From contig NW_003314553.1 of assembly GCF_000143415.4 (NCBI RefSeq), positions 1-13,383 of the forward strand: 13,383 nucleotides of DNA. Reading direction: 5' to 3'. Below, piece after piece: positions 1-13,383 of this stretch (position 1 is the stretch's first letter; each line of letters opens with the position of its first letter). Source of the stretch: Selaginella moellendorffii (Eukaryota; Plantae; Lycopodiophyta). The notes beneath the pieces are model-generated. The model was not told where the DNA came from. It saw only the letters and a program-made list of their open reading frames with translations, and ran no database searches. The translations under genes were made by a program, and so were the position numbers.

Positions 1-281
1 CACCCTAAACCCTAAACCCTAAACCCTAAAACCCTAAACCCTAAACCCTAAACCCTACCCCTAAACCCTAAACCCTAAACCCTAAACCCTAAACCCTAAA
101 CCCTAAACCCTAAACCCTAAACCCTAAACCTAAACCCTAAACCCTAAACCCTAAACCCTAAACCCTAAACCCTAAACCCTAAACCCTAAACCCTAAACCC
201 TAAAACCGGCTAAACCCTAAACCCTAAACCCTAAACCCTAAACCCTAAACCCTAAACCCTAAACCCTAAACCCTAAACCTA
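1..281. repeat. Terminal telomere tract (CCCTAAA)n, C-rich strand on +
   Basis: About 40 tandem CCCTAAA units from the window start, with occasional variants (CCCTAAAA, CCTAAA, AAAACCGGCTAAA at ~202-214). A C-rich + strand at position 1 fits a left chromosome end. Confidence 0.97.
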
Positions 282-404
282 CGACCAGCGACATCAAGCT
301 CTCCTTGCACGCTCGCGCCGCTCTAGCGACGCCTGTCGACGGGCCCCCCTCGCCTTCAAGCTGCCTTACACACTCCACAGTGCACAGCTAGGCTTGGGGG
401 ACAT

Positions 405-418
405 CCTAAACCCTAAAC
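405..418. repeat. Short internal telomeric stretch CCTAAACCCTAAAC
   Basis: Two telomere units inside otherwise unique sequence, in the same orientation as the flanking tracts. Confidence 0.85.
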
Positions 419-595
419 AGGTGATGGATGAAGCTCCCGCAGACACACTCCCCCGAGTGATTACGTGCTGGAGACGCTCCCCGAACCTCGGTTCGTTCCT
501 GGTCAGGGCCAAGCTCCCTCCGCGAGCTTAGCCACGTCTTGTACCACACTTTGCAAGACATGGAAGCATATGTTTGCATCTTTCTCCGCGTACCC

Positions 596-1031
596 GATGA
601 CTCCCAGGGTCTGGCCGATGGACTTCAGGTATGTCCAAAGTCACTCCAGGCCACCCCCCTTTCGAGTCAACGCCCGGTCAACGCGGAGTCAACGGTCAGA
701 ACGGAATATTCCCCAATATTCCGACTGTATCCCTGTTGACCGAGTCAAAACGGCATATACCGTTGGATTCCGCTCTTCCTTCCGATCGTGAATATGTGAG
801 TTTCAACTCTGAACTCCACACACGATTCGTTGAAAAGCGTGTATTCCGTTAAAACGGTACCGCTCCTTCGACATCGGCGATGCACGCCGACAGCTCGCGG
901 GATGGCTCTCCCCTGCACCACCGCTGGACTTCGGGTATGTATGAGTGACCTCAGGCCCTCCACCATCCCAGTCCACACACGGTCAACGCGGGGTCAACGG
1001 TCAACGACGGAATATTCTCAGAATATTCCCT
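596..1031 (+). repeat. Degenerate direct repeat, ~130 bp x2 (~596-722 and ~901-1031), period ~305 bp
   Basis: Collinear blocks: TGGACTTC(A/G)GGTATGT (619, 925), CAGGCC, CGGTCAACGCGG(A/G)GTCAACGGTCA (675, 980), ACGGAATATTC...AATATTCC. Confidence 0.85.
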
Positions 1032-1306
1032 GCAAAGTGGACCACGTTTTTCGTCGCCGGGTACGTACGAGTGACACAAGCATTGTGGACGTAACGCATG
1101 CATCATATCATGCTGCGTTTACAAGTTATCTTGCGTCAAAGGTACGTCACCCGCCGGCCGAACGCTTACTGTCTTCGGCGATCCGCCGAAGTCATTCTCC
1201 GCGACTACCACTGCTGTGGAGTAACCAACACCAGCTGTGCTACGTTCGCAACCTCGCGAGCCAACGCTGCCACGCCACTTCGCATGGCCGCCACACGGAC
1301 TCGCGC

Positions 1307-1330
1307 CACGTGACAGAGCCAAAATATAAG
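1307..1330 (+). promoter_or_regulatory. Possible core promoter upstream of the hammerhead (G-box plus TATA-like)
   Basis: CACGTG at 1307-1312 and TATAAG at 1325-1330, about 40 nt upstream of the ribozyme. Motif match only. Confidence 0.3.
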
Positions 1331-1366
1331 TAGAGTCGGCACCGAGCTAGGGTTAGGGTAGACACT

Positions 1367-1424
1367 AGACGACTACACCCGGCTGATGAGTCCCAAAAAG
1401 GACGAAACCGGTCTCGGGTTGTCT
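1367..1424 (+). ncRNA. Type I hammerhead ribozyme (minimal, palindromic stem III)
   Basis: Core CUGAUGA at 1383-1389. Stem II GUCC (1390-1393)/GGAC (1400-1403) with loop CAAAAA. GAAA at 1404-1407. Stem III is the palindrome ACCGGU at 1407-1412, with the GUC triplet at 1411-1413 (predicted cut after C1413). Stem I is CCGG (1379-1382)/UCGG (1414-1417), extended after a UACAC bulge by AGACGAC (1367-1373)/GUUGUCU (1418-1424). Confidence 0.93.
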
Positions 1425-1445
1425 CTTGTCCTCTCCCTCGCTCAC

Positions 1446-1465
1446 GAATGAATGAAAATTCATTC
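1446..1465 (+). other. Perfect 8-bp hairpin with GAAA (GNRA) tetraloop
   Basis: GAATGAAT-GAAA-ATTCATTC. Confidence 0.75.
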
Positions 1466-1583
1466 CCTCGCATCCTCTACTTGCTCTCGATCACGCCGTT
1501 TCGACAACGGCACACGGAGAATGTGGATTGCACAAAGTGGTGCCGCGATCTCGCCGGATTGCAGCACTGCGGGGTGTCTTTGA

Positions 1584-1883
1584 CCCTAAACGCCTAAACG
1601 CGCCTAAACCCTAAACCCTAAACCCTAAACCCTAAACCCTAAACCCTAAAACCGGTTAAACCCTAAACCCTAAACCCTAAACCCTAAACCCTAAACCCTA
1701 AACCCTAAACCGGTAAACCCTAAACCCTAAACCCTAAAACCCTAAACCCTAAACCCTAAACCCTAAACCCTAAACCCTAAACCCTAAACCCTAAACCCTA
1801 AACCCTAAACCGGTAAACCCTAAACCCTAAACCCTAAAACCCTAAACCCTAAACCCTAAACCCTAAACCCTAAACCCTAAACC
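1584..1883. repeat. Internal telomere tract (CCCTAAA)n with CCGGT-containing variants; probable earlier chromosome end
   Basis: About 300 bp of CCCTAAA. It starts with degenerate units (CGCCTAAA, CGCGCCTAAA at 1591-1608) and has variants ACCGGTTAAA (1651-1660) and CCGGTAAA (1710-1717, 1810-1817). Confidence 0.96.
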
Positions 1884-2164
1884 GCTTCGAGGGCATCGAT
1901 CCGAATTGGCTGGGCCCCCCATGCCATGCTGGCACCGTGCGTGCCTTGTCGAAAACGGCACACCCTTGCGACCGCTGGGCGAAAGGGGCAAACCCCGAGA
2001 GGTCCTTGCACCTCCTGTCACTGGGGAGGGTGCCCCCCACGAACACGAACCCAACGGCGCCAGTCCCACGCGAAACGCACGCACGGTTCGCGAGAAAACG
2101 GCCCCCAACGCCCGCATTCTCCATTATTCCGAGAGAATATTCCCTCCACTACTTAAATTGTGCC

Positions 2165-2264
2165 AAAAAGAGGTGGCTCCGGGTGGGTCTCGACCCAGGG
2201 ACCTATTTGAGTGGACTTGTTTTTAGATTGGGGGTCTCTGCCACTAGGCCTCTACCACCTCTCC
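2165..2264 (-). ncRNA. Candidate ~100-nt Pol III small RNA with vault-RNA-like/tRNA-derived architecture, copy 1
   Basis: Minus strand: GGAGAGGUGGUAG-AGGCCUAGUGG (A-box-like, 2241-2251)...GGGUCGAGACCC (B-box-like, 2185-2196)...GCCACCUCU-UUUU. There is a 9-bp terminal stem AGAGGUGGU/GCCACCUCU and a T5 run at 2165-2169. Confidence 0.55.
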
Positions 2265-2283
2265 GTTACATATTTCGTGTCGG

Positions 2284-2341
2284 TTAAATTTATTGGGTTT
2301 GTGGGGGAGGGGGTTTAACTAGCAAAGGGCGATTATGGGGA
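2284..2341 (-). promoter_or_regulatory. Putative upstream promoter for the small RNA: TATA-like plus USE-like; repeated in each unit
   Basis: On the minus strand, AATAAATTTAA lies at about -30..-20 (2284-2294) and TCCCCATAATCG at about -77..-66 (2330-2341), resembling the plant snRNA USE RTCCCACATCG. Confidence 0.4.
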
Positions 2342-2481
2342 GCGCTTAGTGCGATTAAGTGGGGCTTAAGTTGGGGCAATCGCGGCCGTCGGTGCGGTGG
2401 GGTGGTTGACCGGCGGCGATGAGTTTGACCGGCGGTCCCCGTGACACGTGGCTAGGGCTAGGGTCTGGATATGGGTTTTGC

Positions 2482-2765
2482 GCGAGTGGGCAAGATCCAT
2501 GGCTCGGTTTGCGGTGGGACTTGAACCGTTGGAAAGCTTGCGTGAGTCCACCCGTTTCCACAGAAACGGATCTGGATTTCGTCGCTCCACCGGCCCGCAC
2601 CATTGCGATGGGTTTGACGCTGGGTTTTCGAGCGAGTGGGCAACATCCATGGCTCGGTTTGCGGTGGGACTTGAACCGTTGGAAAGCTTGCGTGAGTCCA
2701 CCCGTTTCCACAGAAACGGATCCCGATTTCGTTGCTCCACCGTCCCACACCATTGCAATGGGTTT
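2482..2765 (+). repeat. Internal direct duplication within each unit (~134 bp x2, period 150 bp); recurs in every copy
   Basis: GCGAGTGGGCAA(G/C)ATCCATGGCTCGG...CACCATTGC(G/A)ATGGGTTT at 2482-2615 and 2632-2765, with a few substitutions. Confidence 0.95.
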
Positions 2766-3413
2766 TGTGCTGTTCCCGTTGCCATATCTCGTGGACCGTG
2801 GGCCCCCTTTCGCCCTTGGGCACATGGGAGCAACTGGGGCGGTGCGCGCAACTGGCCCATGTGGCCAAGTACATTTTTCCATGTCCTGGGCGCCTGCTTT
2901 TGTGGTTTTTCCCACGGAAGAAGATGCGTCCCACGTGGCGATCCGTGTGCCCGCCCGCACTCCGGCACCAACGGGGCCGGCCGGCGTGACGCCCCGGTCG
3001 CGGCCGTGCCAACGGATCGCGGGCCCCATGCGTGGGCTGCCGCCGGGAGTGCATCTCACTCTCGAGGAAAACACCGCACTGGCGCTCGGGCCTGCACTGG
3101 AACGCGACCCCAGGAGCGCCGTGGCGAAGCCCGCGTCGAGGGCATCGATCCGAATTGGCTGGGCCCCCCATGCCATGCTGGCACCGTGCGTGCCTTGTCG
3201 AAAACGGCACACCCTTGCGACCGCTGGGCGAAAGGGGCAAACCCCGAGAGGTCCTTGCACCTCCTGTCACTGGGGAGGGTGCCCCCCACGAACACGAACC
3301 CAACGGCGCCAGTCCCACGCGAAACGCACGCACGGTTCGCGAGAAAACGGCCCCCAACGCCCGCATTCTCCATTATTCCGAGAGAATATTCCCTCCACTA
3401 CTTAAATTGTGCC

Positions 3414-3513
3414 AAAAAGAGGTGGCTCCGGGTGGGTCTCGACCCAGGGACCTATTTGAGTGGACTTGTTTTTAGATTGGGGGTCTCTGCCACTAGGCCT
3501 CTACCACCTCTCC
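3414..3513 (-). ncRNA. Candidate Pol III small RNA, copy 2
   Basis: Same sequence as 2165-2264. Confidence 0.55.
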
Positions 3514-4662
3514 GTTACATATTTCGTGTCGGTTAAATTTATTGGGTTTGTGGGGGAGGGGGTTTAACTAGCAAAGGGCGATTATGGGGAGCGCTTAGTG
3601 CGATTAAGTGGGGCTTAAGTTGGGGCAATCGCGGCCGTCGGTGCGGTGGGGTGGTTGACCGGCGGCGATGAGTTTGACCGGCGGTCCCCGTGACACGTGG
3701 CTAGGGCTAGGGTCTGGATATGGGTTTTGCGCGAGTGGGCAAGATCCATGGCTCGGTTTGCGGTGGGACTTGAACCGTTGGAAAGCTTGCGTGAGTCCAC
3801 CCGTTTCCACAGAAACGGATCTGGATTTCGTCGCTCCACCGGCCCGCACCATTGCGATGGGTTTGACGCTGGGTTTTCGAGCGAGTGGGCAACATCCATG
3901 GCTCGGTTTGCGGTGGGACTTGAACCGTTGGAAAGCTTGCGTGAGTCCACCCGTTTCCACAGAAACGGATCCCGATTTCGTTGCTCCACCGTCCCACACC
4001 ATTGCAATGGGTTTTGTGCTGTTCCCGTTGCCATATCTCGTGGACCGTGGGCCCCCTTTCGCCCTTGGGCACATGGGAGCAACTGGGGCGGTGCGCGCAA
4101 CTGGCCCATGTGGCCAAGTACATTTTTCCATGTCCTGGGCGCCTGCTTTTGTGGTTTTTCCCACGGAAGAAGATGCGTCCCACGTGGCGATCCGTGTGCC
4201 CGCCCGCACTCCGGCACCAACGGGGCCGGCCGGCGTGACGCCCCGGTCGCGGCCGTGCCAACGGATCGCGGGCCCCATGCGTGGGCTGCCGCCGGGAGTG
4301 CATCTCACTCTCGAGGAAAACACCGCACTGGCGCTCGGGCCTGCACTGGAACGCGACCCCAGGAGCGCCGTGGCGAAGCCCGCGTCGAGGGCATCGATCC
4401 GAATTGGCTGGGCCCCCCATGCCATGCTGGCACCGTGCGTGCCTTGTCGAAAACGGCACACCCTTGCGACCGCTGGGCGAAAGGGGCAAACCCCGAGAGG
4501 TCCTTGCACCTCCTGTCACTGGGGAGGGTGCCCCCCACGAACACGAACCCAACGGCGCCAGTCCCACGCGAAACGCACGCACGGTTCGCGAGAAAACGGC
4601 CCCCAACGCCCGCATTCTCCATTATTCCGAGAGAATATTCCCTCCACTACTTAAATTGTGCC

Positions 4663-4762
4663 AAAAAGAGGTGGCTCCGGGTGGGTCTCGACCCAGGGAC
4701 CTATTTGAGTGGACTTGTTTTTAGATTGGGGGTCTCTGCCACTAGGCCTCTACCACCTCTCC
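4663..4762 (-). ncRNA. Candidate Pol III small RNA, copy 3
   Basis: Same sequence as 2165-2264. Confidence 0.55.
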
Positions 4763-5911
4763 GTTACATATTTCGTGTCGGTTAAATTTATTGGGTTTGT
4801 GGGGGAGGGGGTTTAACTAGCAAAGGGCGATTATGGGGAGCGCTTAGTGCGATTAAGTGGGGCTTAAGTTGGGGCAATCGCGGCCGTCGGTGCGGTGGGG
4901 TGGTTGACCGGCGGCGATGAGTTTGACCGGCGGTCCCCGTGACACGTGGCTAGGGCTAGGGTCTGGATATGGGTTTTGCGCGAGTGGGCAAGATCCATGG
5001 CTCGGTTTGCGGTGGGACTTGAACCGTTGGAAAGCTTGCGTGAGTCCACCCGTTTCCACAGAAACGGATCTGGATTTCGTCGCTCCACCGGCCCGCACCA
5101 TTGCGATGGGTTTGACGCTGGGTTTTCGAGCGAGTGGGCAACATCCATGGCTCGGTTTGCGGTGGGACTTGAACCGTTGGAAAGCTTGCGTGAGTCCACC
5201 CGTTTCCACAGAAACGGATCCCGATTTCGTTGCTCCACCGTCCCACACCATTGCAATGGGTTTTGTGCTGTTCCCGTTGCCATATCTCGTGGACCGTGGG
5301 CCCCCTTTCGCCCTTGGGCACATGGGAGCAACTGGGGCGGTGCGCGCAACTGGCCCATGTGGCCAAGTACATTTTTCCATGTCCTGGGCGCCTGCTTTTG
5401 TGGTTTTTCCCACGGAAGAAGATGCGTCCCACGTGGCGATCCGTGTGCCCGCCCGCACTCCGGCACCAACGGGGCCGGCCGGCGAGACGCCCCGGTCGCG
5501 GCCGTGCCAACGGATCGCGGGCCCCATGCGTGGGCTGCCGCCGGGAGTGCATCTCACTCTCGAGGAAAACACCGCACTGGCGCTCGGGCCTGCACTGGAA
5601 CGCGACCCCAGGAGCGCCGTGGCGAAGCCCGCGTCGAGGGCATCGATCCGAATTGGCTGGGCCCCCCATGCCATGCTGGCACCGTGCGTGCCTTGTCGAA
5701 AACGGCACACCCTTGCGACCGCTGGGCGAAAGGGGCAAACCCCGAGAGGTCCTTGCACCTCCTGTCACTGGGGAGGGTGCCCCCCACGAACACGAACCCA
5801 ACGGCGCCAGTCCCACGCGAAACGCACGCACGGTTCGCGAGAAAACGGCCCCCAACGCCCGCATTCTCCATTATTCCGAGAGAATATTCCCTCCACTACT
5901 TAAATTGTGCC

Positions 5912-6011
5912 AAAAAGAGGTGGCTCCGGGTGGGTCTCGACCCAGGGACCTATTTGAGTGGACTTGTTTTTAGATTGGGGGTCTCTGCCACTAGGCCTCT
6001 ACCACCTCTCC
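5912..6011 (-). ncRNA. Candidate Pol III small RNA, copy 4
   Basis: Same sequence as 2165-2264. Confidence 0.55.
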
Positions 6012-7160
6012 GTTACATATTTCGTGTCGGTTAAATTTATTGGGTTTGTGGGGGAGGGGGTTTAACTAGCAAAGGGCGATTATGGGGAGCGCTTAGTGCG
6101 ATTAAGTGGGGCTTAAGTTGGGGCAATCGCGGCCGTCGGTGCGGTGGGGTGGTTGACCGGCGGCGATGAGTTTGACCGGCGGTCCCCGTGACACGTGGCT
6201 AGGGCTAGGGTCTGGATATGGGTTTTGCGCGAGTGGGCAAGATCCATGGCTCGGTTTGCGGTGGGACTTGAACCGTTGGAAAGCTTGCGTGAGTCCACCC
6301 GTTTCCACAGAAACGGATCTGGATTTCGTCGCTCCACCGGCCCGCACCATTGCGATGGGTTTGACGCTGGGTTTTCGAGCGAGTGGGCAACATCCATGGC
6401 TCGGTTTGCGGTGGGACTTGAACCGTTGGAAAGCTTGCGTGAGTCCACCCGTTTCCACAGAAACGGATCCCGATTTCGTTGCTCCACCGTCCCACACCAT
6501 TGCAATGGGTTTTGTGCTGTTCCCGTTGCCATATCTCGTGGACCGTGGGCCCCCTTTCGCCCTTGGGCACATGGGAGCAACTGGGGCGGTGCGCGCAACT
6601 GGCCCATGTGGCCAAGTACATTTTTCCATGTCCTGGGCGCCTGCTTTTGTGGTTTTTCCCACGGAAGAAGATGCGTCCCACGTGGCGATCCGTGTGCCCG
6701 CCCGCACTCCGGCACCAACGGGGCCGGCCGGCGTGACGCCCCGGTCGCGGCCGTGCCAACGGATCGCGGGCCCCATGCGTGGGCTGCCGCCGGGAGTGCA
6801 TCTCACTCTCGAGGAAAACACCGCACTGGCGCTCGGGCCTGCACTGGAACGCGACCCCAGGAGCGCCGTGGCGAAGCCCGCGTCGAGGGCATCGATCCGA
6901 ATTGGCTGGGCCCCCCATGCCATGCTGGCACCGTGCGTGCCTTGTCGAAAACGGCACACCCTTGCGACCGCTGGGCGAAAGGGGCAAACCCCGAGAGGTC
7001 CTTGCACCTCCTGTCACTGGGGAGGGTGCCCCCCACGAACACGAACCCAACGGCGCCAGTCCCACGCGAAACGCACGCACGGTTCGCGAGAAAACGGCCC
7101 CCAACGCCCGCATTCTCCATTATTCCGAGAGAATATTCCCTCCACTACTTAAATTGTGCC

Positions 7161-7260
7161 AAAAAGAGGTGGCTCCGGGTGGGTCTCGACCCAGGGACCT
7201 ATTTGAGTGGACTTGTTTTTAGATTGGGGGTCTCTGCCACTAGGCCTCTACCACCTCTCC
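7161..7260 (-). ncRNA. Candidate Pol III small RNA, copy 5
   Basis: Same sequence as 2165-2264. Confidence 0.55.
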
Positions 7261-8409
7261 GTTACATATTTCGTGTCGGTTAAATTTATTGGGTTTGTGG
7301 GGGAGGGGGTTTAACTAGCAAAGGGCGATTATGGGGAGCGCTTAGTGCGATTAAGTGGGGCTTAAGTTGGGGCAATCGCGGCCGTCGGTGCGGTGGGGTG
7401 GTTGACCGGCGGCGATGAGTTTGACCGGCGGTCCCCGTGACACGTGGCTAGGGCTAGGGTCTGGATATGGGTTTTGCGCGAGTGGGCAAGATCCATGGCT
7501 CGGTTTGCGGTGGGACTTGAACCGTTGGAAAGCTTGCGTGAGTCCACCCGTTTCCACAGAAACGGATCTGGATTTCGTCGCTCCACCGGCCCGCACCATT
7601 GCGATGGGTTTGACGCTGGGTTTTCGAGCGAGTGGGCAACATCCATGGCTCGGTTTGCGGTGGGACTTGAACCGTTGGAAAGCTTGCGTGAGTCCACCCG
7701 TTTCCACAGAAACGGATCCCGATTTCGTTGCTCCACCGTCCCACACCATTGCAATGGGTTTTGTGCTGTTCCCGTTGCCATATCTCGTGGACCGTGGGCC
7801 CCCTTTCGCCCTTGGGCACATGGGAGCAACTGGGGCGGTGCGCGCAACTGGCCCATGTGGCCAAGTACATTTTTCCATGTCCTGGGCGCCTGCTTTTGTG
7901 GTTTTTCCCACGGAAGAAGATGCGTCCCACGTGGCGATCCGTGTGCCCGCCCGCACTCCGGCACCAACGGGGCCGGCCGGCGTGACGCCCCGGTCGCGGC
8001 CGTGCCAACGGATCGCGGGCCCCATGCGTGGGCTGCCGCCGGGAGTGCATCTCACTCTCGAGGAAAACACCGCATTGGCGCTCGGGCCTGCACTGGAACG
8101 CGACCCCAGGAGCGCCGTGGCGAAGCCCGCGTCGAGGGCATCGATCCGAATTGGCTGGGCCCCCCATGCCATGCTGGCACCGTGCGTGCCTTGTCGAAAA
8201 CGGCACACCCTTGCGACCGCTGGGCGAAAGGGGCAAACCCCGAGAGGTCCTTGCACCTCCTGTCACTGGGGAGGGTGCCCCCCACGAACACGAACCCAAC
8301 GGCGCCAGTCCCACGCGAAACGCACGCACGGTTCGCGAGAAAACGGCCCCCAACGCCCGCATTCTCCATTATTCCGAGAGAATATTCCCTCCACTACTTA
8401 AATTGTGCC

Positions 8410-8509
8410 AAAAAGAGGTGGCTCCGGGTGGGTCTCGACCCAGGGACCTATTTGAGTGGACTTGTTTTTAGATTGGGGGTCTCTGCCACTAGGCCTCTAC
8501 CACCTCTCC
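8410..8509 (-). ncRNA. Candidate Pol III small RNA, copy 6
   Basis: Same sequence as 2165-2264. Confidence 0.55.
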
Positions 8510-9658
8510 GTTACATATTTCGTGTCGGTTAAATTTATTGGGTTTGTGGGGGAGGGGGTTTAACTAGCAAAGGGCGATTATGGGGAGCGCTTAGTGCGAT
8601 TAAGTGGGGCTTAAGTTGGGGCAATCGCGGCCGTCGGTGCGGTGGGGTGGTTGACCGGCGGCGATGAGTTTGACCGGCGGTCCCCGTGACACGTGGCTAG
8701 GGCTAGGGTCTGGATATGGGTTTTGCGCGAGTGGGCAAGATCCATGGCTCGGTTTGCGGTGGGACTTGAACCGTTGGAAAGCTTGCGTGAGTCCACCCGT
8801 TTCCACAGAAACGGATCTGGATTTCGTCGCTCCACCGGCCCGCACCATTGCGATGGGTTTGACGCTGGGTTTTCGAGCGAGTGGGCAACATCCATGGCTC
8901 GGTTTGCGGTGGGACTTGAACCGTTGGAAAGCTTGCGTGAGTCCACCCGTTTCCACAGAAACGGATCCCGATTTCGTTGCTCCACCGTCCCACACCATTG
9001 CAATGGGTTTTGTGCTGTTCCCGTTGCCATATCTCGTGGACCGTGGGCCCCCTTTCGCCCTTGGGCACATGGGAGCAACTGGGGCGGTGCGCGCAACTGG
9101 CCCATGTGGCCAAGTACATTTTTCCATGTCCTGGGCGCCTGCTTTTGTGGTTTTTCCCACGGAAGAAGATGCGTCCCACGTGGCGATCCGTGTGCCTGCC
9201 CGCACTCCGGCACCAACGGGGCCGGCCGGCGTGACGCCCCGGTCGCGGCCGTGCCAACGGATCGCGGGCCCCATGCGTGGGCTGCCGCCGGGAGTGCATC
9301 TCACTCTCGAGGAAAACACCGCACTGGCGCTCGGGCCTGCACTGGAACGCGACCCCAGGAGCGCCGTGGCGAAGCCCGCGTCGAGGGCATCGATCCGAAT
9401 TGGCTGGGCCCCCCATGCCATGCTGGCACCGTGCGTGCCTTGTCGAAAACGGCACACCCTTGCGACCGCTGGGCGAAAGGGGCAAACCCCGAGAGGTCCT
9501 TGCACCTCCTGTCACTGGGGAGGGTGCCCCCCACGAACACGAACCCAACGGCGCCAGTCCCACGCGAAACGCACGCACGGTTCGCGAGAAAACGGCCCCC
9601 AACGCCCGCATTCTCCATTATTCCGAGAGAATATTCCCTCCACTACTTAAATTGTGCC

Positions 9659-9758
9659 AAAAAGAGGTGGCTCCGGGTGGGTCTCGACCCAGGGACCTAT
9701 TTGAGTGGACTTGTTTTTAGATTGGGGGTCTCTGCCACTAGGCCTCTACCACCTCTCC
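9659..9758 (-). ncRNA. Candidate Pol III small RNA, copy 7
   Basis: Same sequence as 2165-2264. Confidence 0.55.
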
Positions 9759-10907
9759 GTTACATATTTCGTGTCGGTTAAATTTATTGGGTTTGTGGGG
9801 GAGGGGGTTTAACTAGCAAAGGGCGATTATGGGGAGCGCTTAGTGCGATTAAGTGGGGCTTAAGTTGGGGCAATCGCGGCCGTCGGTGCGGTGGGGTGGT
9901 TGACCGGCGGCGATGAGTTTGACCGGCGGTCCCCGTGACACGTGGCTAGGGCTAGGGTCTGGATATGGGTTTTGCGCGAGTGGGCAAGATCCATGGCTCG
10001 GTTTGCGGTGGGACTTGAACCGTTGGAAAGCTTGCGTGAGTCCACCCGTTTCCACAGAAACGGATCTGGATTTCGTCGCTCCACCGGCCCGCACCATTGC
10101 GATGGGTTTGACGCTGGGTTTTCGAGCGAGTGGGCAACATCCATGGCTCGGTTTGCGGTGGGACTTGAACCGTTGGAAAGCTTGCGTGAGTCCACCCGTT
10201 TCCACAGAAACGGATCCCGATTTCGTTGCTCCACCGTCCCACACCATTGCAATGGGTTTTGTGCTGTTCCCGTTGCCATATCTCGTGGACCGTGGGCCCC
10301 CTTTCGCCATTGGGCACATGGGAGCAACTGGGGCGGTGCGCGCAACTGGCCCATGTGGCCAAGTACATTTTTCCATGTCCTGGGCGCCTGCTTTTGTGGT
10401 TTTTCCCACGGAAGAAGATGCGTCCCACGTGGCGATCCGTGTGCCCGCCCGCACTCCGGCACCAACGGGGCCGGCCGGCGTGACGCCCCGGTCGCGGCCG
10501 TGCCAACGGATCGCGGGCCCCATGCGTGGGCTGCCGCCGGGAGTGCATCTCACTCTCGAGGAAAACACCGCACTGGCGCTCGGGCCTGCACTGGAACGCG
10601 ACCCCAGGAGCGCCGTGGCGAAGCCCGCGTCGAGGGCATCGATCCGAATTGGCTGGGCCCCCCATGCCATGCTGGCACCGTGCGTGCCTTGTCGAAAACG
10701 GCACACCCTTGCGACCGCTGGGCGAAAGGGGCAAACCCCGAGAGGTCCTTGCACCTCCTGTCACTGGGGAGGGTGCCCCCCACGAACACGAACCCAACGG
10801 CGCCAGTCCCACGCGAAACGCACGCACGGTTCGCGAGAAAACGGCCCCCAACGCCCGCATTCTCCATTATTCCGAGAGAATATTCCCTCCACTACTTAAA
10901 TTGTGCC

Positions 10908-11007
10908 AAAAAGAGGTGGCTCCGGGTGGGTCTCGACCCAGGGACCTATTTGAGTGGACTTGTTTTTAGATTGGGGGTCTCTGCCACTAGGCCTCTACCA
11001 CCTCTCC
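10908..11007 (-). ncRNA. Candidate Pol III small RNA, copy 8
   Basis: Same sequence as 2165-2264. Confidence 0.55.
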
Positions 11008-12155
11008 GTTACATATTTCGTGTCGGTTAAATTTATTGGGTTTGTGGGGGAGGGGGTTTAACTAGCAAAGGGCGATTATGGGGAGCGCTTAGTGCGATTA
11101 AGTGGGGCTTAAGTTGGGGCAATCGCGGCCGTCGGTGCGGTGGGGTGGTTGACCGGCGGCGATGAGTTTGACCGGCGGTCCCCGTGACACGTGGCTAGGG
11201 CTAGGGTCTGGATATGGGTTTTGCGCGAGTGGGCAAGATCCATGGCTCGGTTTGCGGTGGGACTTGAACCGTTGGAAAGCTTGCGTGAGTCCACCCGTTT
11301 CCACAGAAACGGATCTGGATTTCGTCGCTCCACCGGCCCGCACCATTGCGATGGGTTTGACGCTGGGTTTTCGAGCGAGTGGGCAACATCCATGGCTCGG
11401 TTTGCGGTGGGACTTGAACCGTTGGAAAGCTTGCGTGAGTCCACCCGTTTCCACAGAAACGGATCCCGATTTCGTTGCTCCACCGTCCCACACCATTGCA
11501 ATGGGTTTTGTGCTGTTCCCGTTGCCATATCTCGTGGACCGTGGGCCCCCTTTCGCCCTTGGGCACATGGGAGCAACTGGGGCGGTGCGCGCAACTGGCC
11601 CATGTGGCCAAGTACATTTTTCCATGTCCTGGGCGCCTGCTTTTGTGTTTTTCCCACGGAAGAAGATGCGTCCCACGTGGCGATCCGTGTGCCCGCCCGC
11701 ACTCCGGCACCAACGGGGCCGGCCGGCGTGACGCCCCGGTCGCGGCCGTGCCAACGGATCGCGGGCCCCATGCGTGGGCTGCCGCCGGGAGTGCATCTCA
11801 CTCTCGAGGAAAACACCGCACTGGCGCTCGGGCCTGCACTGGAACGCGACCCCAGGAGCGCCGTGGCGAAGCCCGCGTCGAGGGCATCGATCCGAATTGG
11901 CTGGGCCCCCCATGCCATGCTGGCACCGTGCGTGCCTTGTCGAAAACGGCACACCCTTGCGACCGCTGGGCGAAAGGGGCAAACCCCGAGAGGTCCTTGC
12001 ACCTCCTGTCACTGGGGAGGGTGCCCCCCACGAACACGAACCCAACGGCGCCAGTCCCACGCGAAACGCACGCACGGTTCGCGAGAAAACGGCCCCCAAC
12101 GCCCGCATTCTCCATTATTCCGAGAGAATATTCCCTCCACTACTTAAATTGTGCC

Positions 12156-12255
12156 AAAAAGAGGTGGCTCCGGGTGGGTCTCGACCCAGGGACCTATTTG
12201 AGTGGACTTGTTTTTAGATTGGGGGTCTCTGCCACTAGGCCTCTACCACCTCTCC
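12156..12255 (-). ncRNA. Candidate Pol III small RNA, copy 9
   Basis: Same sequence as 2165-2264, offset by 1 because of the deletion near 11647. Confidence 0.55.
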
Positions 12256-13383
12256 GTTACATATTTCGTGTCGGTTAAATTTATTGGGTTTGTGGGGGAG
12301 GGGGTTTAACTAGCAAAGGGCGATTATGGGGAGCGCTTAGTGCGATTAAGTGGGGCTTAAGTTGGGGCAATCGCGGCCGTCGGTGCGGTGGGGTGGTTGA
12401 CCGGCGGCGATGAGTTTGACCGGCGGTCCCCGTGACACGTGGCTAGGGCTAGGGTCTGGATATGGGTTTTGCGCGAGTGGGCAAGATCCATGGCTCGGTT
12501 TGCGGTGGGACTTGAACCGTTGGAAAGCTTGCGTGAGTCCACCCGTTTCCACAGAAACGGATCTGGATTTCGTCGCTCCACCGGCCCGCACCATTGCGAT
12601 GGGTTTGACGCTGGGTTTTCGAGCGAGTGGGCAACATCCATGGCTCGGTTTGCGGTGGGACTTGAACCGTTGGAAAGCTTGCGTGAGTCCACCCGTTTCC
12701 ACAGAAACGGATCCCGATTTCGTTGCTCCACCGTCCCACACCATTGCAATGGGTTTTGTGCTGTTCCCGTTGCCATATCTCGTGGACCGTGGGCCCCCTT
12801 TCGCCCTTGGGCACATGGGAGCAACTGGGGCGGTGCGCGCAACTGGCCCATGTGGCCAAGTACATTTTTCCATGTCCTGGGCGCCTGCTTTTGTGGTTTT
12901 TCCCACGGAAGAAGATGCGTCCCACGTGGCGATCCGTGTGCCCGCCCGCACTCCGGCACCAACGGGGCCGGCCGGCGTGACGCCCCGGTCGCGGCCGTGC
13001 CAACGGATCGCGGGCCCCATGCGTGGGCTGCCGCCGGGAGTGCATCTCACTCTCGAGGAAAACACCGCACTGGCGCTCGGGCCTGCACTGGAACGCGACC
13101 CCAGGAGCGCCGTGGCGAAGCCCGCGTCGAGGGCATCGATCCGAATTGGCTGGGCCCCCCATGCCATGCTGGCACCGTGCGTGCCTTGTCGAAAACGGCA
13201 CACCCTTGCGACCGCTGGGCGAAAGGGGCAAACCCCGAGAGGTCCTTGCACCTCCTGTCACTGGGGAGGGTGCCCCCCACGAACACGAACCCAACGGCGC
13301 CAGTCCCACGCGAAACGCACGCACGGTTCGCGAGAAAACGGCCCCCAACGCCCGCATTCTCCATTATCCGAGAGAATATTCCC

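What the first reader, a model, noticed from the sequence alone, without database searches (positions are those of the whole stretch)
2165..2264. Each subtelomeric repeat unit hides a vault-RNA-like ~100-nt Pol III gene
Seen on the minus strand: GGAGAGGUGGUAGAGGCCUAGUGGCAGAGACCCCCAAUCUAAAAACAAGUCCACUCAAAUAGGUCCCUGGGUCGAGACCCACCCGGAGCCACCUCUUUUU. It can fold as a nested panhandle: AGAGGUGGU/GCCACCUCU, GG/CC, GUGG/CCAC and GACCC/GGGUC, closing an A/C-rich central loop, and it ends in a U-run. Known: vault RNAs are ~100-nt Pol III transcripts with a terminal panhandle, an A box near the 5' end, a B box containing UCGAGAC near the 3' end, and a variable centre. In human vtRNA1-1, as I recall it, the GCGG ending the A box is complementary to CCGC after UCGAGAC; the equivalent here is GUGG/CCAC. 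Inference: this is a vault-like or novel tRNA-derived small RNA amplified as a telomere-adjacent gene array and transcribed towards the telomere. Both boxes deviate from consensus (A for T at the A-box start, G for T in the B box), so the identity is uncertain.
Basis: partly seen in the sequence, partly recalled or inferred. Interest (0 to 1): 0.8.

Follow-up and report, generated by a model that had tools for sequence, protein, structure and literature searches.

The report
Orphan tRNA-like Pol III cassette, subtelomeric satellite
Each 1.25-kb unit of a repeat that here runs right up to a chromosome end carries a 100-base stretch with all the DNA signals of a small RNA polymerase III gene. 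It is not a vault RNA or a tRNA, and nothing yet shows that the RNA is made.

Summary
The 100-nt minus-strand sequence is exactly as quoted and occurs nine times without a single difference, once per 1249-bp unit. It has a box A (10/11), a box B (10/11) 44 nt downstream, a T5 stop, no internal T4, a TATA-like AT-rich patch at -30 to -20, and a robust 9-11 bp terminal stem.

Box A, box B, their spacing and the T-run stop arise together by chance about 0.0004 times per shuffled unit.

The vault reading fails:
- No Rfam family (Vault, tRNA, Y RNA or any other) matches this strand, even at E<=10 on 151 nt.
- ARAGORN finds no tRNA.
- Only the terminal stem is stable. The whole fold is not clearly better than shuffles (z -1.6).
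- Vaults are probably missing from plants.

The best reading is an orphan, probably tRNA-gene-derived, type-2 Pol III cassette carried along in a satellite. Here it points towards a telomere that joins the array directly.

All copies are identical, so the window gives no evidence on conservation. No relative was found elsewhere.

The scan has already followed up this same 1249-bp repeat on at least six other pieces of the genome, which its notes call Selaginella moellendorffii, with the same verdict.

The parts
2165..2264 (-). Pol III-type cassette, copy 1 of 9. Identical copies lie at 3414-3513, 4663-4762, 5912-6011, 7161-7260, 8410-8509, 9659-9758, 10908-11007 and 12156-12255.
   Evidence: Exact-match scan and pattern search giving 9 matches against 0 in shuffles.
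2241..2251 (-). Box A-like 11-mer AGGCCTAGTGG, cassette positions 14-24. It matches 10 of 11 positions of TRGCNNAGTGG.
   Evidence: It is the only site in the unit, on either strand, with one mismatch or fewer.
2186..2196 (-). Box B-like 11-mer GGGTCGAGACC, cassette positions 69-79. It matches 10 of 11 positions of GGTTCGANNCC and lies 44 nt after box A.
2165..2169 (-). T5 run, the predicted Pol III terminator. There is no T4 inside the cassette.
2254..2262 (-). 5' arm of the terminal stem, cassette positions 3-11.
   Evidence: Pair probabilities 0.95-1.0. The stem is present in the minimum-energy and centroid folds.
2169..2177 (-). 3' arm of the terminal stem, cassette positions 88-96.
2284..2294 (-). 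TATA-like AT-rich element AATAAATTTAA at -30 to -20. It sits in the most AT-rich 50-nt stretch of the unit (GC 0.42).
1884..13383 (.). Tandem array of 1249-bp units: nine cassette-bearing copies plus a 260-bp partial tenth copy, cut by the window end. Each unit holds an internal 150-bp duplication, for example at 2473-2772.
   Evidence: Only 6 variant columns separate the units, and none lies in the cassette.
1583..1883 (+). Inner CCCTAAA telomere tract, joined directly to the array at 1883/1884.
2..279 (+). Terminal CCCTAAA telomere tract at the window start.

Best explanation
The 100-nt segment is an orphan type-2 (tRNA-gene-style) RNA polymerase III cassette. It most likely descends from a tRNA gene or a tRNA-derived repeat, and it is copied once per unit because it is part of a 1249-bp satellite.

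Inferred mechanism, none of it shown here:
1. TFIIIC would bind box A and box B.
2. It would place TFIIIB on the AT-rich, TATA-like patch at about -30.
3. Pol III would start within a few bases of the first G and stop in the T5 run.
4. The product would be an RNA of about 96-100 nt. Its two ends would form a 9-11 bp stem with a short oligo-U tail, the usual La-binding end of Pol III transcripts.

The centre of the RNA has no significant structure. The cloverleaf of the supposed ancestor is gone.

By analogy with the tandem tRNA gene clusters of Arabidopsis, which keep canonical signals yet are silenced by DNA methylation, most copies are probably silent most of the time.

At this chromosome end the array joins telomere repeats directly and the cassettes point outwards. 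This looks like a consequence of where the array ends, not a telomere function. It is not a vault RNA.
For: - Signals: box A 10/11, box B 10/11, a 44-nt gap, T5 and no internal T4 occur together 0.0004 times per shuffled unit.
- Promoter context: a TATA-like element sits at -30 to -20, and the cassette is flanked by the two most AT-rich patches of a 61% GC unit. Plant tRNA genes are described as using an upstream AT-rich/TATA-like motif and a downstream poly-T (PMC7544208).
- Terminal stem: pair probability is at least 0.95, and a terminal helix of 8 or more Watson-Crick pairs occurs in 0.3% of shuffles.
- Passenger status: nine copies are identical, in strict 1249-bp register with the satellite.
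- Separate history: CpG observed/expected is 0.27 in the cassette and 0.96 in the unit.
- Not coding: the unit's long ORFs have no Pfam match, no codon-position bias and no relatives.
- Analogy: clustered tRNA genes in Arabidopsis are silent although they keep their cis-elements (PMC7544208).
- The scan's earlier follow-ups on other pieces reached the same reading. These are leads, not independent evidence.
Against:
- tRNA ancestry rests on the promoter boxes and their spacing only. The Rfam tRNA model does not match at E<=10. ARAGORN finds no credible tRNA, even at lowered thresholds. In the box A/box B register the would-be acceptor stem keeps only 4 of 7 pairs (read directly from the sequence).
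- No CAA triplet lies between -1 and -20. That motif is reported to matter for initiation on plant tRNA genes (PMC7544208; sequence).
- Both boxes deviate at positions that are nearly invariant in tRNAs (T8 and T54).
- Across a genome of 100 Mb or more, the box and terminator combination alone would arise by chance a few tens of times (my extrapolation). The case therefore needs the terminal stem and the -30 element as well.
- The identity of the copies reflects homogenisation of the satellite, not selection.
Confidence: 0.55

Rival explanations
1. It is a real, functional, lineage-specific small RNA gene family. A Pol III RNA of about 100 nt would be expressed from arrays in the way 5S RNA is, with a role of its own, for example in subtelomeric chromatin or as a ribonucleoprotein component.
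For: The set of signals is complete and the terminal stem is stable. All nine copies are intact. The scan's notes say site-specific LINEs land at one nucleotide in box B on other pieces. That habit is otherwise known for multicopy RNA genes, but it was not tested here.
Against: No transcript is shown. No RNA family matches. The core has no significant structure, z -0.9. No relatives were found outside this genome. The copies are identical, so there is no evidence of covariation or selection. The CAA initiation motif is missing.
Confidence: 0.17
2. It acts on DNA, not as a gene. The unit would be an array of TFIIIC-binding sites of the ETC/COC or tDNA-barrier type, organising or bounding heterochromatin next to the telomere.
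For: Four box-B-like 11-mers per unit, all on the minus strand: 1892-1902, 2186-2196, 2517-2527 and 2667-2677. About 0.53 are expected per unit on both strands together. GGTTCAAGTCC in the 150-bp subrepeats is a good box B with no box A or tRNA-like arm around it. That tRNA genes and TFIIIC sites act as barriers in yeasts is established knowledge, not tested here.
Against: Two of the four sites are copies of one duplication, so only three are independent (Poisson P about 0.005 by my estimate). Each has one mismatch. A barrier role for TFIIIC sites has not been shown in plants, to my knowledge. There are no occupancy data.
Confidence: 0.1
3. It is a chance resemblance, or a fully dead relic such as the head of a decayed SINE. 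No polymerase or factor would use the boxes.
For: Both boxes are imperfect. There is no cloverleaf. The fold is not significant overall. A 7-nt direct repeat, AATTTAA, lies at -26 and +6 and could be a target-site duplication from an old insertion. The cassette is CpG-poor, like old methylated DNA.
Against: The joint probability of boxes, spacing, terminator and terminal stem is about 1e-6 per unit. A TATA-like element sits at the right distance. The window shows no SINE body, A-rich tail or dispersed copies. The T5 follows directly after the stem.
Confidence: 0.15
4. It is a vault RNA.
For: It shares length, box A and box B, a terminal panhandle and a U-run.
Against: The Rfam Vault model (RF00006) gives no hit, even at E<=10 on 151 nt. 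The vault-like fold is a minor conformer. [quoted passage not shown] The shared features are common to most type-2 Pol III transcripts.
Confidence: 0.02

Closest known systems
Tandem tRNA gene clusters of Arabidopsis thaliana (Ser-Tyr-Tyr, Pro and Cys clusters; PMC7544208, PMC12308677)
   Same: They are unit repeats of roughly 0.4 kb upwards (the Cys units are 0.4 kbp, PMC10701932), each carrying type-2 Pol III genes with box A, box B, an upstream AT-rich element and a poly-T. They are embedded in repeat or heterochromatic DNA and are largely silent despite intact signals.
   Different: Those units hold real tRNAs with cloverleaf folds. The cassette here is recognised by no tRNA model and has no anticodon arm.
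tRNA gene arrays of Entamoeba (PMC2652664)
   Same: They are tandem arrays whose units carry Pol III genes. They were proposed, but not shown, to lie at chromosome ends.
   Different: They encode the cell's working tRNAs, and Entamoeba has no telomere repeats. Here ordinary TTTAGGG telomeres are present, and the RNA is not a tRNA.
Vault RNAs (Rfam RF00006)
   Same: They are about 100 nt long, have internal box A and box B, a terminal stem, a variable centre and an oligo-U end.
   Different: The covariance model gives no match. No vault particle is expected in plants. The preferred fold is Y-shaped rather than a single panhandle.
tRNA-derived SINE heads
   Same: They are decayed tRNA-like sequences that keep box A and box B.
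   Different: There is no SINE body, no A-rich or LINE-derived tail, and a terminator directly after 95 nt. In this window it is seen only in register inside a satellite.
TFIIIC-only sites (ETC/COC) and tDNA chromatin barriers of yeasts
   Same: Box-B-like motifs are clustered on one strand next to a heterochromatin-prone region.
   Different: A complete gene-like cassette is present as well. There are no binding data, and such sites are not established in plants.

Membership tests
Vault RNA (RF00006) | Match to the family covariance model (sequence plus structure) | tested here: not met
   No hit at the gathering score. No hit at E<=10 on 3.8 kb or on 151 nt.
Vault RNA (RF00006) | Internal box A and box B, oligo-T terminator, length about 90-140 nt | tested here: met
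   These features are shared with all type-2 Pol III genes, so they are not diagnostic.
Vault RNA (RF00006) | Terminal panhandle as the dominant fold | tested here: inconclusive
   The terminal stem is robust. The full nested panhandle holds about 4% of the ensemble.
Vault RNA (RF00006) | Host encodes the major vault protein, and the RNA associates with vaults | not testable with these tools
   Only this window is available. The literature says vaults are probably missing from plants (PMC3762200).
tRNA (RF00005) | Cloverleaf recognised by tRNA models | tested here: not met
   ARAGORN finds none at default settings or with -ps. At -ps90 with introns allowed it gives only a spurious call with a 1135-nt intron. 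The Rfam tRNA model gives no hit at E<=10.
Type-2 Pol III transcription unit (generic) | Box A and box B at tRNA-like spacing, T4 or longer terminator, no internal T4 | tested here: met
   Box A 10/11, box B 10/11, gap 44 nt, T5. Expected 0.0004 per shuffled unit.
Type-2 Pol III transcription unit (generic) | Plant-type upstream elements: TATA-like motif near -30 and a CAA triplet between -1 and -20 | tested here: inconclusive
   A TATA-like AATAAATTTAA lies at -30 to -20. There is no CAA between -1 and -20; the nearest are at -31 and -37. The criteria come from PMC7544208.
Type-2 Pol III transcription unit (generic) | Actual Pol III transcription or occupancy | not testable with these tools
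Y RNA (RF00019) | Match to the covariance model, including the Ro-binding helix | tested here: not met
   No hit.
tRNA-derived SINE | tRNA-like head plus body plus A-rich or LINE-like tail, dispersed copies with target-site duplications | tested here: not met
   Within this window the terminator follows the head directly and there is no tail. Copies occur only in satellite register. The only flanking repeat is a weak 7-nt one. Genome-wide dispersal was not testable.

The most novel reading that the evidence does not exclude
The cassette is the gene of a so far undescribed lycophyte Pol III RNA of about 100 nt with a terminal stem. It would be kept in hundreds of tandem copies, some reaching the telomere and transcribed outwards. 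It would be old and constant enough to have become the dedicated landing site of sequence-specific LINEs; that last point comes from the scan's notes and was not tested here.
Probability: 0.12. Interest if true: 0.7.

Novelty: new member of a known kind. Interest (0 to 1): 0.33.

Why it matters
If the RNA is made, it would be a new plant Pol III small RNA family. It would be encoded in satellite-like arrays that reach chromosome ends, which is rare outside 5S and tRNA genes. It would also give a handle on how Pol III units behave in plant heterochromatin and next to telomeres.

If the RNA is not made, this is a tidy case of a tRNA-derived promoter fossil amplified passively by a satellite. That is useful for annotation: the repeat should not be called a vault RNA, a tRNA or a coding gene. 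Otherwise it is ordinary.

Tried and rejected
- Rfam at gathering and at E<=10 on 13.4 kb, 3.8 kb and 151 nt gave nothing on the cassette strand. The two weak plus-strand hits (a trypanosomatid snoRNA at 16 bits and mir-1281 at 14.5 bits) are chance.
- ARAGORN at default and lowered thresholds gave only a spurious call with a 1135-nt intron.
- Relatives elsewhere: a metagenome scan for box A, a 38-52 nt gap and box B found one hit, a chance match in a GC-rich contig with no tRNA and no other similarity.
- I tried to reach other copies or other species through proteins called on the satellite. Two exact look-ups and two word searches found nothing. The ORFs have no Pfam match and no codon bias, so the unit is non-coding.
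- Homology between the cassette and the 150-bp subrepeats, which also carry a box B, scored no better than shuffles.
- No telomerase-template-like motif is present in the unit.
- Literature searches for a description of this satellite or of a Selaginella Pol III small RNA found none in the held library.
- The nine copies are identical, so a covariation test was impossible.

Full report
WHAT IS IN THE WINDOW

The window is a chromosome end. CCCTAAA repeats, the C-strand of the plant-type TTTAGGG telomere, fill 2-279 and again 1583-1883. Between the two tracts lies a 1.3-kb non-coding insert with a hammerhead ribozyme at 1377-1419 (RF00163, 40.5 bits against a gathering score of 34).

From 1884 to the end of the window runs a tandem array of 1249-bp units. 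There are nine cassette-bearing copies plus a 260-bp partial tenth copy cut by the window end. Each unit has an internal 150-bp duplication. The units differ at only six alignment columns.

The scan's own notes name the genome as Selaginella moellendorffii. I could not verify that independently. The telomere repeat agrees with what is published for that species (PMC3400083).

THE OBSERVATION

The minus strand of 2165-2264 reads exactly as quoted. It recurs eight more times without any difference, in strict register with the satellite.
- Box A: cassette positions 14-24 are AGGCCTAGTGG, 10 of 11 against TRGCNNAGTGG.
- Box B: positions 69-79 are GGGTCGAGACC, 10 of 11 against GGTTCGANNCC.
- Spacing and stop: the gap is 44 nt, five T follow 16 nt after box B, and there is no internal T4.
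- Chance: in 5000 dinucleotide-preserving shuffles of one unit, both strands, this combination appeared 0.0004 times per unit.
- Upstream: AATAAATTTAA at -30 to -20 sits in the most AT-rich 50 nt of a unit that is 61% GC.

The chromosome end is at the left of the window, so a minus-strand transcript would run towards the telomere.

HOW MUCH OF THE FOLD IS REAL

Only the terminal stem is robust. Positions 3-11 pair with 88-96: eight Watson-Crick pairs plus a U-G, extendable by two G-U pairs into the T-run. Pair probabilities are 0.95-1.0. A terminal helix of 8 or more Watson-Crick pairs occurs in 0.3% of shuffles.

The whole molecule folds at -32.7 kcal/mol with z -1.62, and 11 of 200 shuffles do as well. 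The core without the stem gives z -0.9.

The optimum is a Y shape, in which box A pairs with 51-65 and box B sits in a 3' hairpin.

WHAT IT IS NOT

No Rfam family matches this strand, whether Vault, tRNA, Y RNA, 7SL or any other. This holds at gathering thresholds and at E<=10 on 3.8 kb and on 151 nt.

ARAGORN finds no credible tRNA, even at lowered thresholds with introns allowed. In the register set by the two boxes, the would-be acceptor stem keeps 4 of 7 pairs and the anticodon arm is gone (read from the sequence). The T arm is reduced to 4 bp with a 6-nt loop.

Vault particles are held to be probably missing from plants (PMC3762200). The features shared with vault RNA (length, boxes, panhandle, U-run) are those of most type-2 Pol III transcripts. 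Vault membership therefore fails on the one diagnostic test available.

The unit is not protein-coding either. Its 300-360 aa ORFs lie on both strands, have no Pfam match, no codon-position GC bias and no relatives.

WHAT IT MOST LIKELY IS

It is most likely an orphan type-2 Pol III cassette, probably a much-decayed tRNA gene or tRNA-derived repeat. The 44-nt box spacing fits long-variable-arm tRNAs; that is an inference. It has been carried to high copy number as a passenger of the satellite.

The mechanism I commit to is the standard one, and every step is inferred rather than shown:
1. TFIIIC binds boxes A and B.
2. TFIIIB sits on the -30 AT-rich element.
3. Pol III starts near the first G.
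4. Termination in T5 gives an RNA of about 96-100 nt with a stem-closed end and an oligo-U tail.

The closest documented parallel is the tandem tRNA gene clusters of Arabidopsis. They keep canonical cis-elements yet are silenced by CG methylation and heterochromatin (PMC7544208). I therefore expect most copies to be silent.

Two points weaken the case for efficient transcription. No CAA triplet lies between -1 and -20, a motif reported to matter for plant tRNA genes. Both boxes also deviate at positions that are nearly invariant in tRNAs.

The cassette is the most CpG-poor 100 nt of the unit (observed/expected 0.27 against 0.96 for the whole unit). This hints at a history different from its CpG-rich surroundings.

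THE TELOMERE CONTEXT

The inner telomere tract joins the satellite directly at 1883/1884, with no transition sequence. The order is array, 300 bp of telomere repeats, hammerhead element, terminal telomere repeats. This reads as an array that ends at a telomere which was later extended by a retro-addition.

Nothing in the window ties the cassette itself to telomere function. The unit contains no telomerase-template-like motif. According to the scan's notes the same satellite lies on many other pieces, one with at least 51 units. 'Subtelomeric' is true here but is not shown to be the rule.

RIVALS

- A real new small RNA gene family is not excluded (about 0.17). The signals are complete and every copy is intact. 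The notes report site-specific LINEs landing in box B elsewhere (untested here).
- A DNA-level role as a TFIIIC site array has a small hook (about 0.1). Four box-B-like 11-mers per unit, all on the minus strand, compare with about 0.5 expected.
- A dead relic or chance resemblance remains possible (about 0.15).
- Vault RNA is at about 0.02.

WHAT COULD NOT BE DONE

- All nine copies are identical, so no covariation or conservation test was possible.
- A metagenome scan found only a chance match.
- Attempts to reach other assemblies through proteins called on the repeat found nothing.
- No paper in the held library describes this satellite or its RNA.

EARLIER WORK IN THIS SCAN

The same 1249-bp repeat and cassette were already followed up on at least six other pieces of this genome: s1-361215, s1-419596, s1-402712, s1-418731, s1-424090 and s1-432118. 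All reached the same verdict: an orphan tRNA-like Pol III cassette, not vault, with no transcript seen.

My tests reproduce that verdict on this copy. They add the direct junction with a telomere, the outward orientation, the ensemble weight of the vault-like fold, the missing CAA motif, the CpG contrast and the one-strand cluster of box-B-like sites.

VERDICT

Noticed in passing
window 280-1582 (+), hammerhead at 1377-1419: A non-coding 1.3-kb insert lies between two telomere tracts and carries a type I hammerhead (RF00163, 40.5 bits, above the gathering score; HH9 model 40.8 bits, below it). Its 3' end runs into degenerate telomere repeats at about 1573-1610. This is the layout expected for a telomere-primed Penelope-like retro-addition. 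It is already listed as separate findings (s1-402716, s1-402876).
   Followed up: partly
window 704, 1010, 1021 (insert) and 2135 (every satellite unit): The palindromic octamer GAATATTC occurs 4 times in 2.55 kb of non-redundant sequence, against 0.016 expected. The 11-mer GGAATATTCTC is shared by the telomeric insert (+ strand) and the satellite unit (- strand, 20-30 nt downstream of the cassette's T5). The stretch 701-722 looks like a heat-shock-element-type array of GAA/TTC units. It may be a common protein-binding site of the two end-associated repeats.
   Followed up: partly
window 676, 735, 981, 992, 999 (insert) and 2405 (unit): GGTCAAC/GTTGACC (a W-box-like TTGAC core) occurs 6 times, against 0.32 expected. 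Most copies lie in two clusters inside the insert, next to the GAATATTC motifs.
   Followed up: partly
window 1892-1902, 2517-2527, 2667-2677 (all minus strand): There are three further box-B-like 11-mers per unit besides the cassette's own, all on the same strand. They include GGTTCAAGTCC in both 150-bp subrepeats. None has a box A or a tRNA-like arm, and they show no significant homology to the cassette.
   Followed up: partly
window 1884-3132, against 2165-2264: The satellite unit is CpG-rich (observed/expected 0.96, GC 61%), like unmethylated or recently homogenised DNA. The cassette is the most CpG-poor block, at 0.27.
   Followed up: no
window 1883/1884, and position 1886: Telomere repeats join the satellite directly. 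The first unit differs from all the others at its third base (T instead of G), right at the junction.
   Followed up: no
window 206, 1652, 1710, 1810: Variant telomere repeats containing CCGG (CCGGCTAAA, CCGGTTAAA, CCGGTAAA) occur in both tracts. The two at 1710 and 1810 are 100 bp apart, which suggests a duplication inside the inner tract.
   Followed up: no
window 2284-2290 and 2153-2159 (minus-strand -26 and +6 of the cassette): A 7-nt direct repeat, AATTTAA, flanks the cassette together with its promoter-proximal 19 nt. It could be an old target-site duplication, but it is weak in AT-rich flanks.
   Followed up: no
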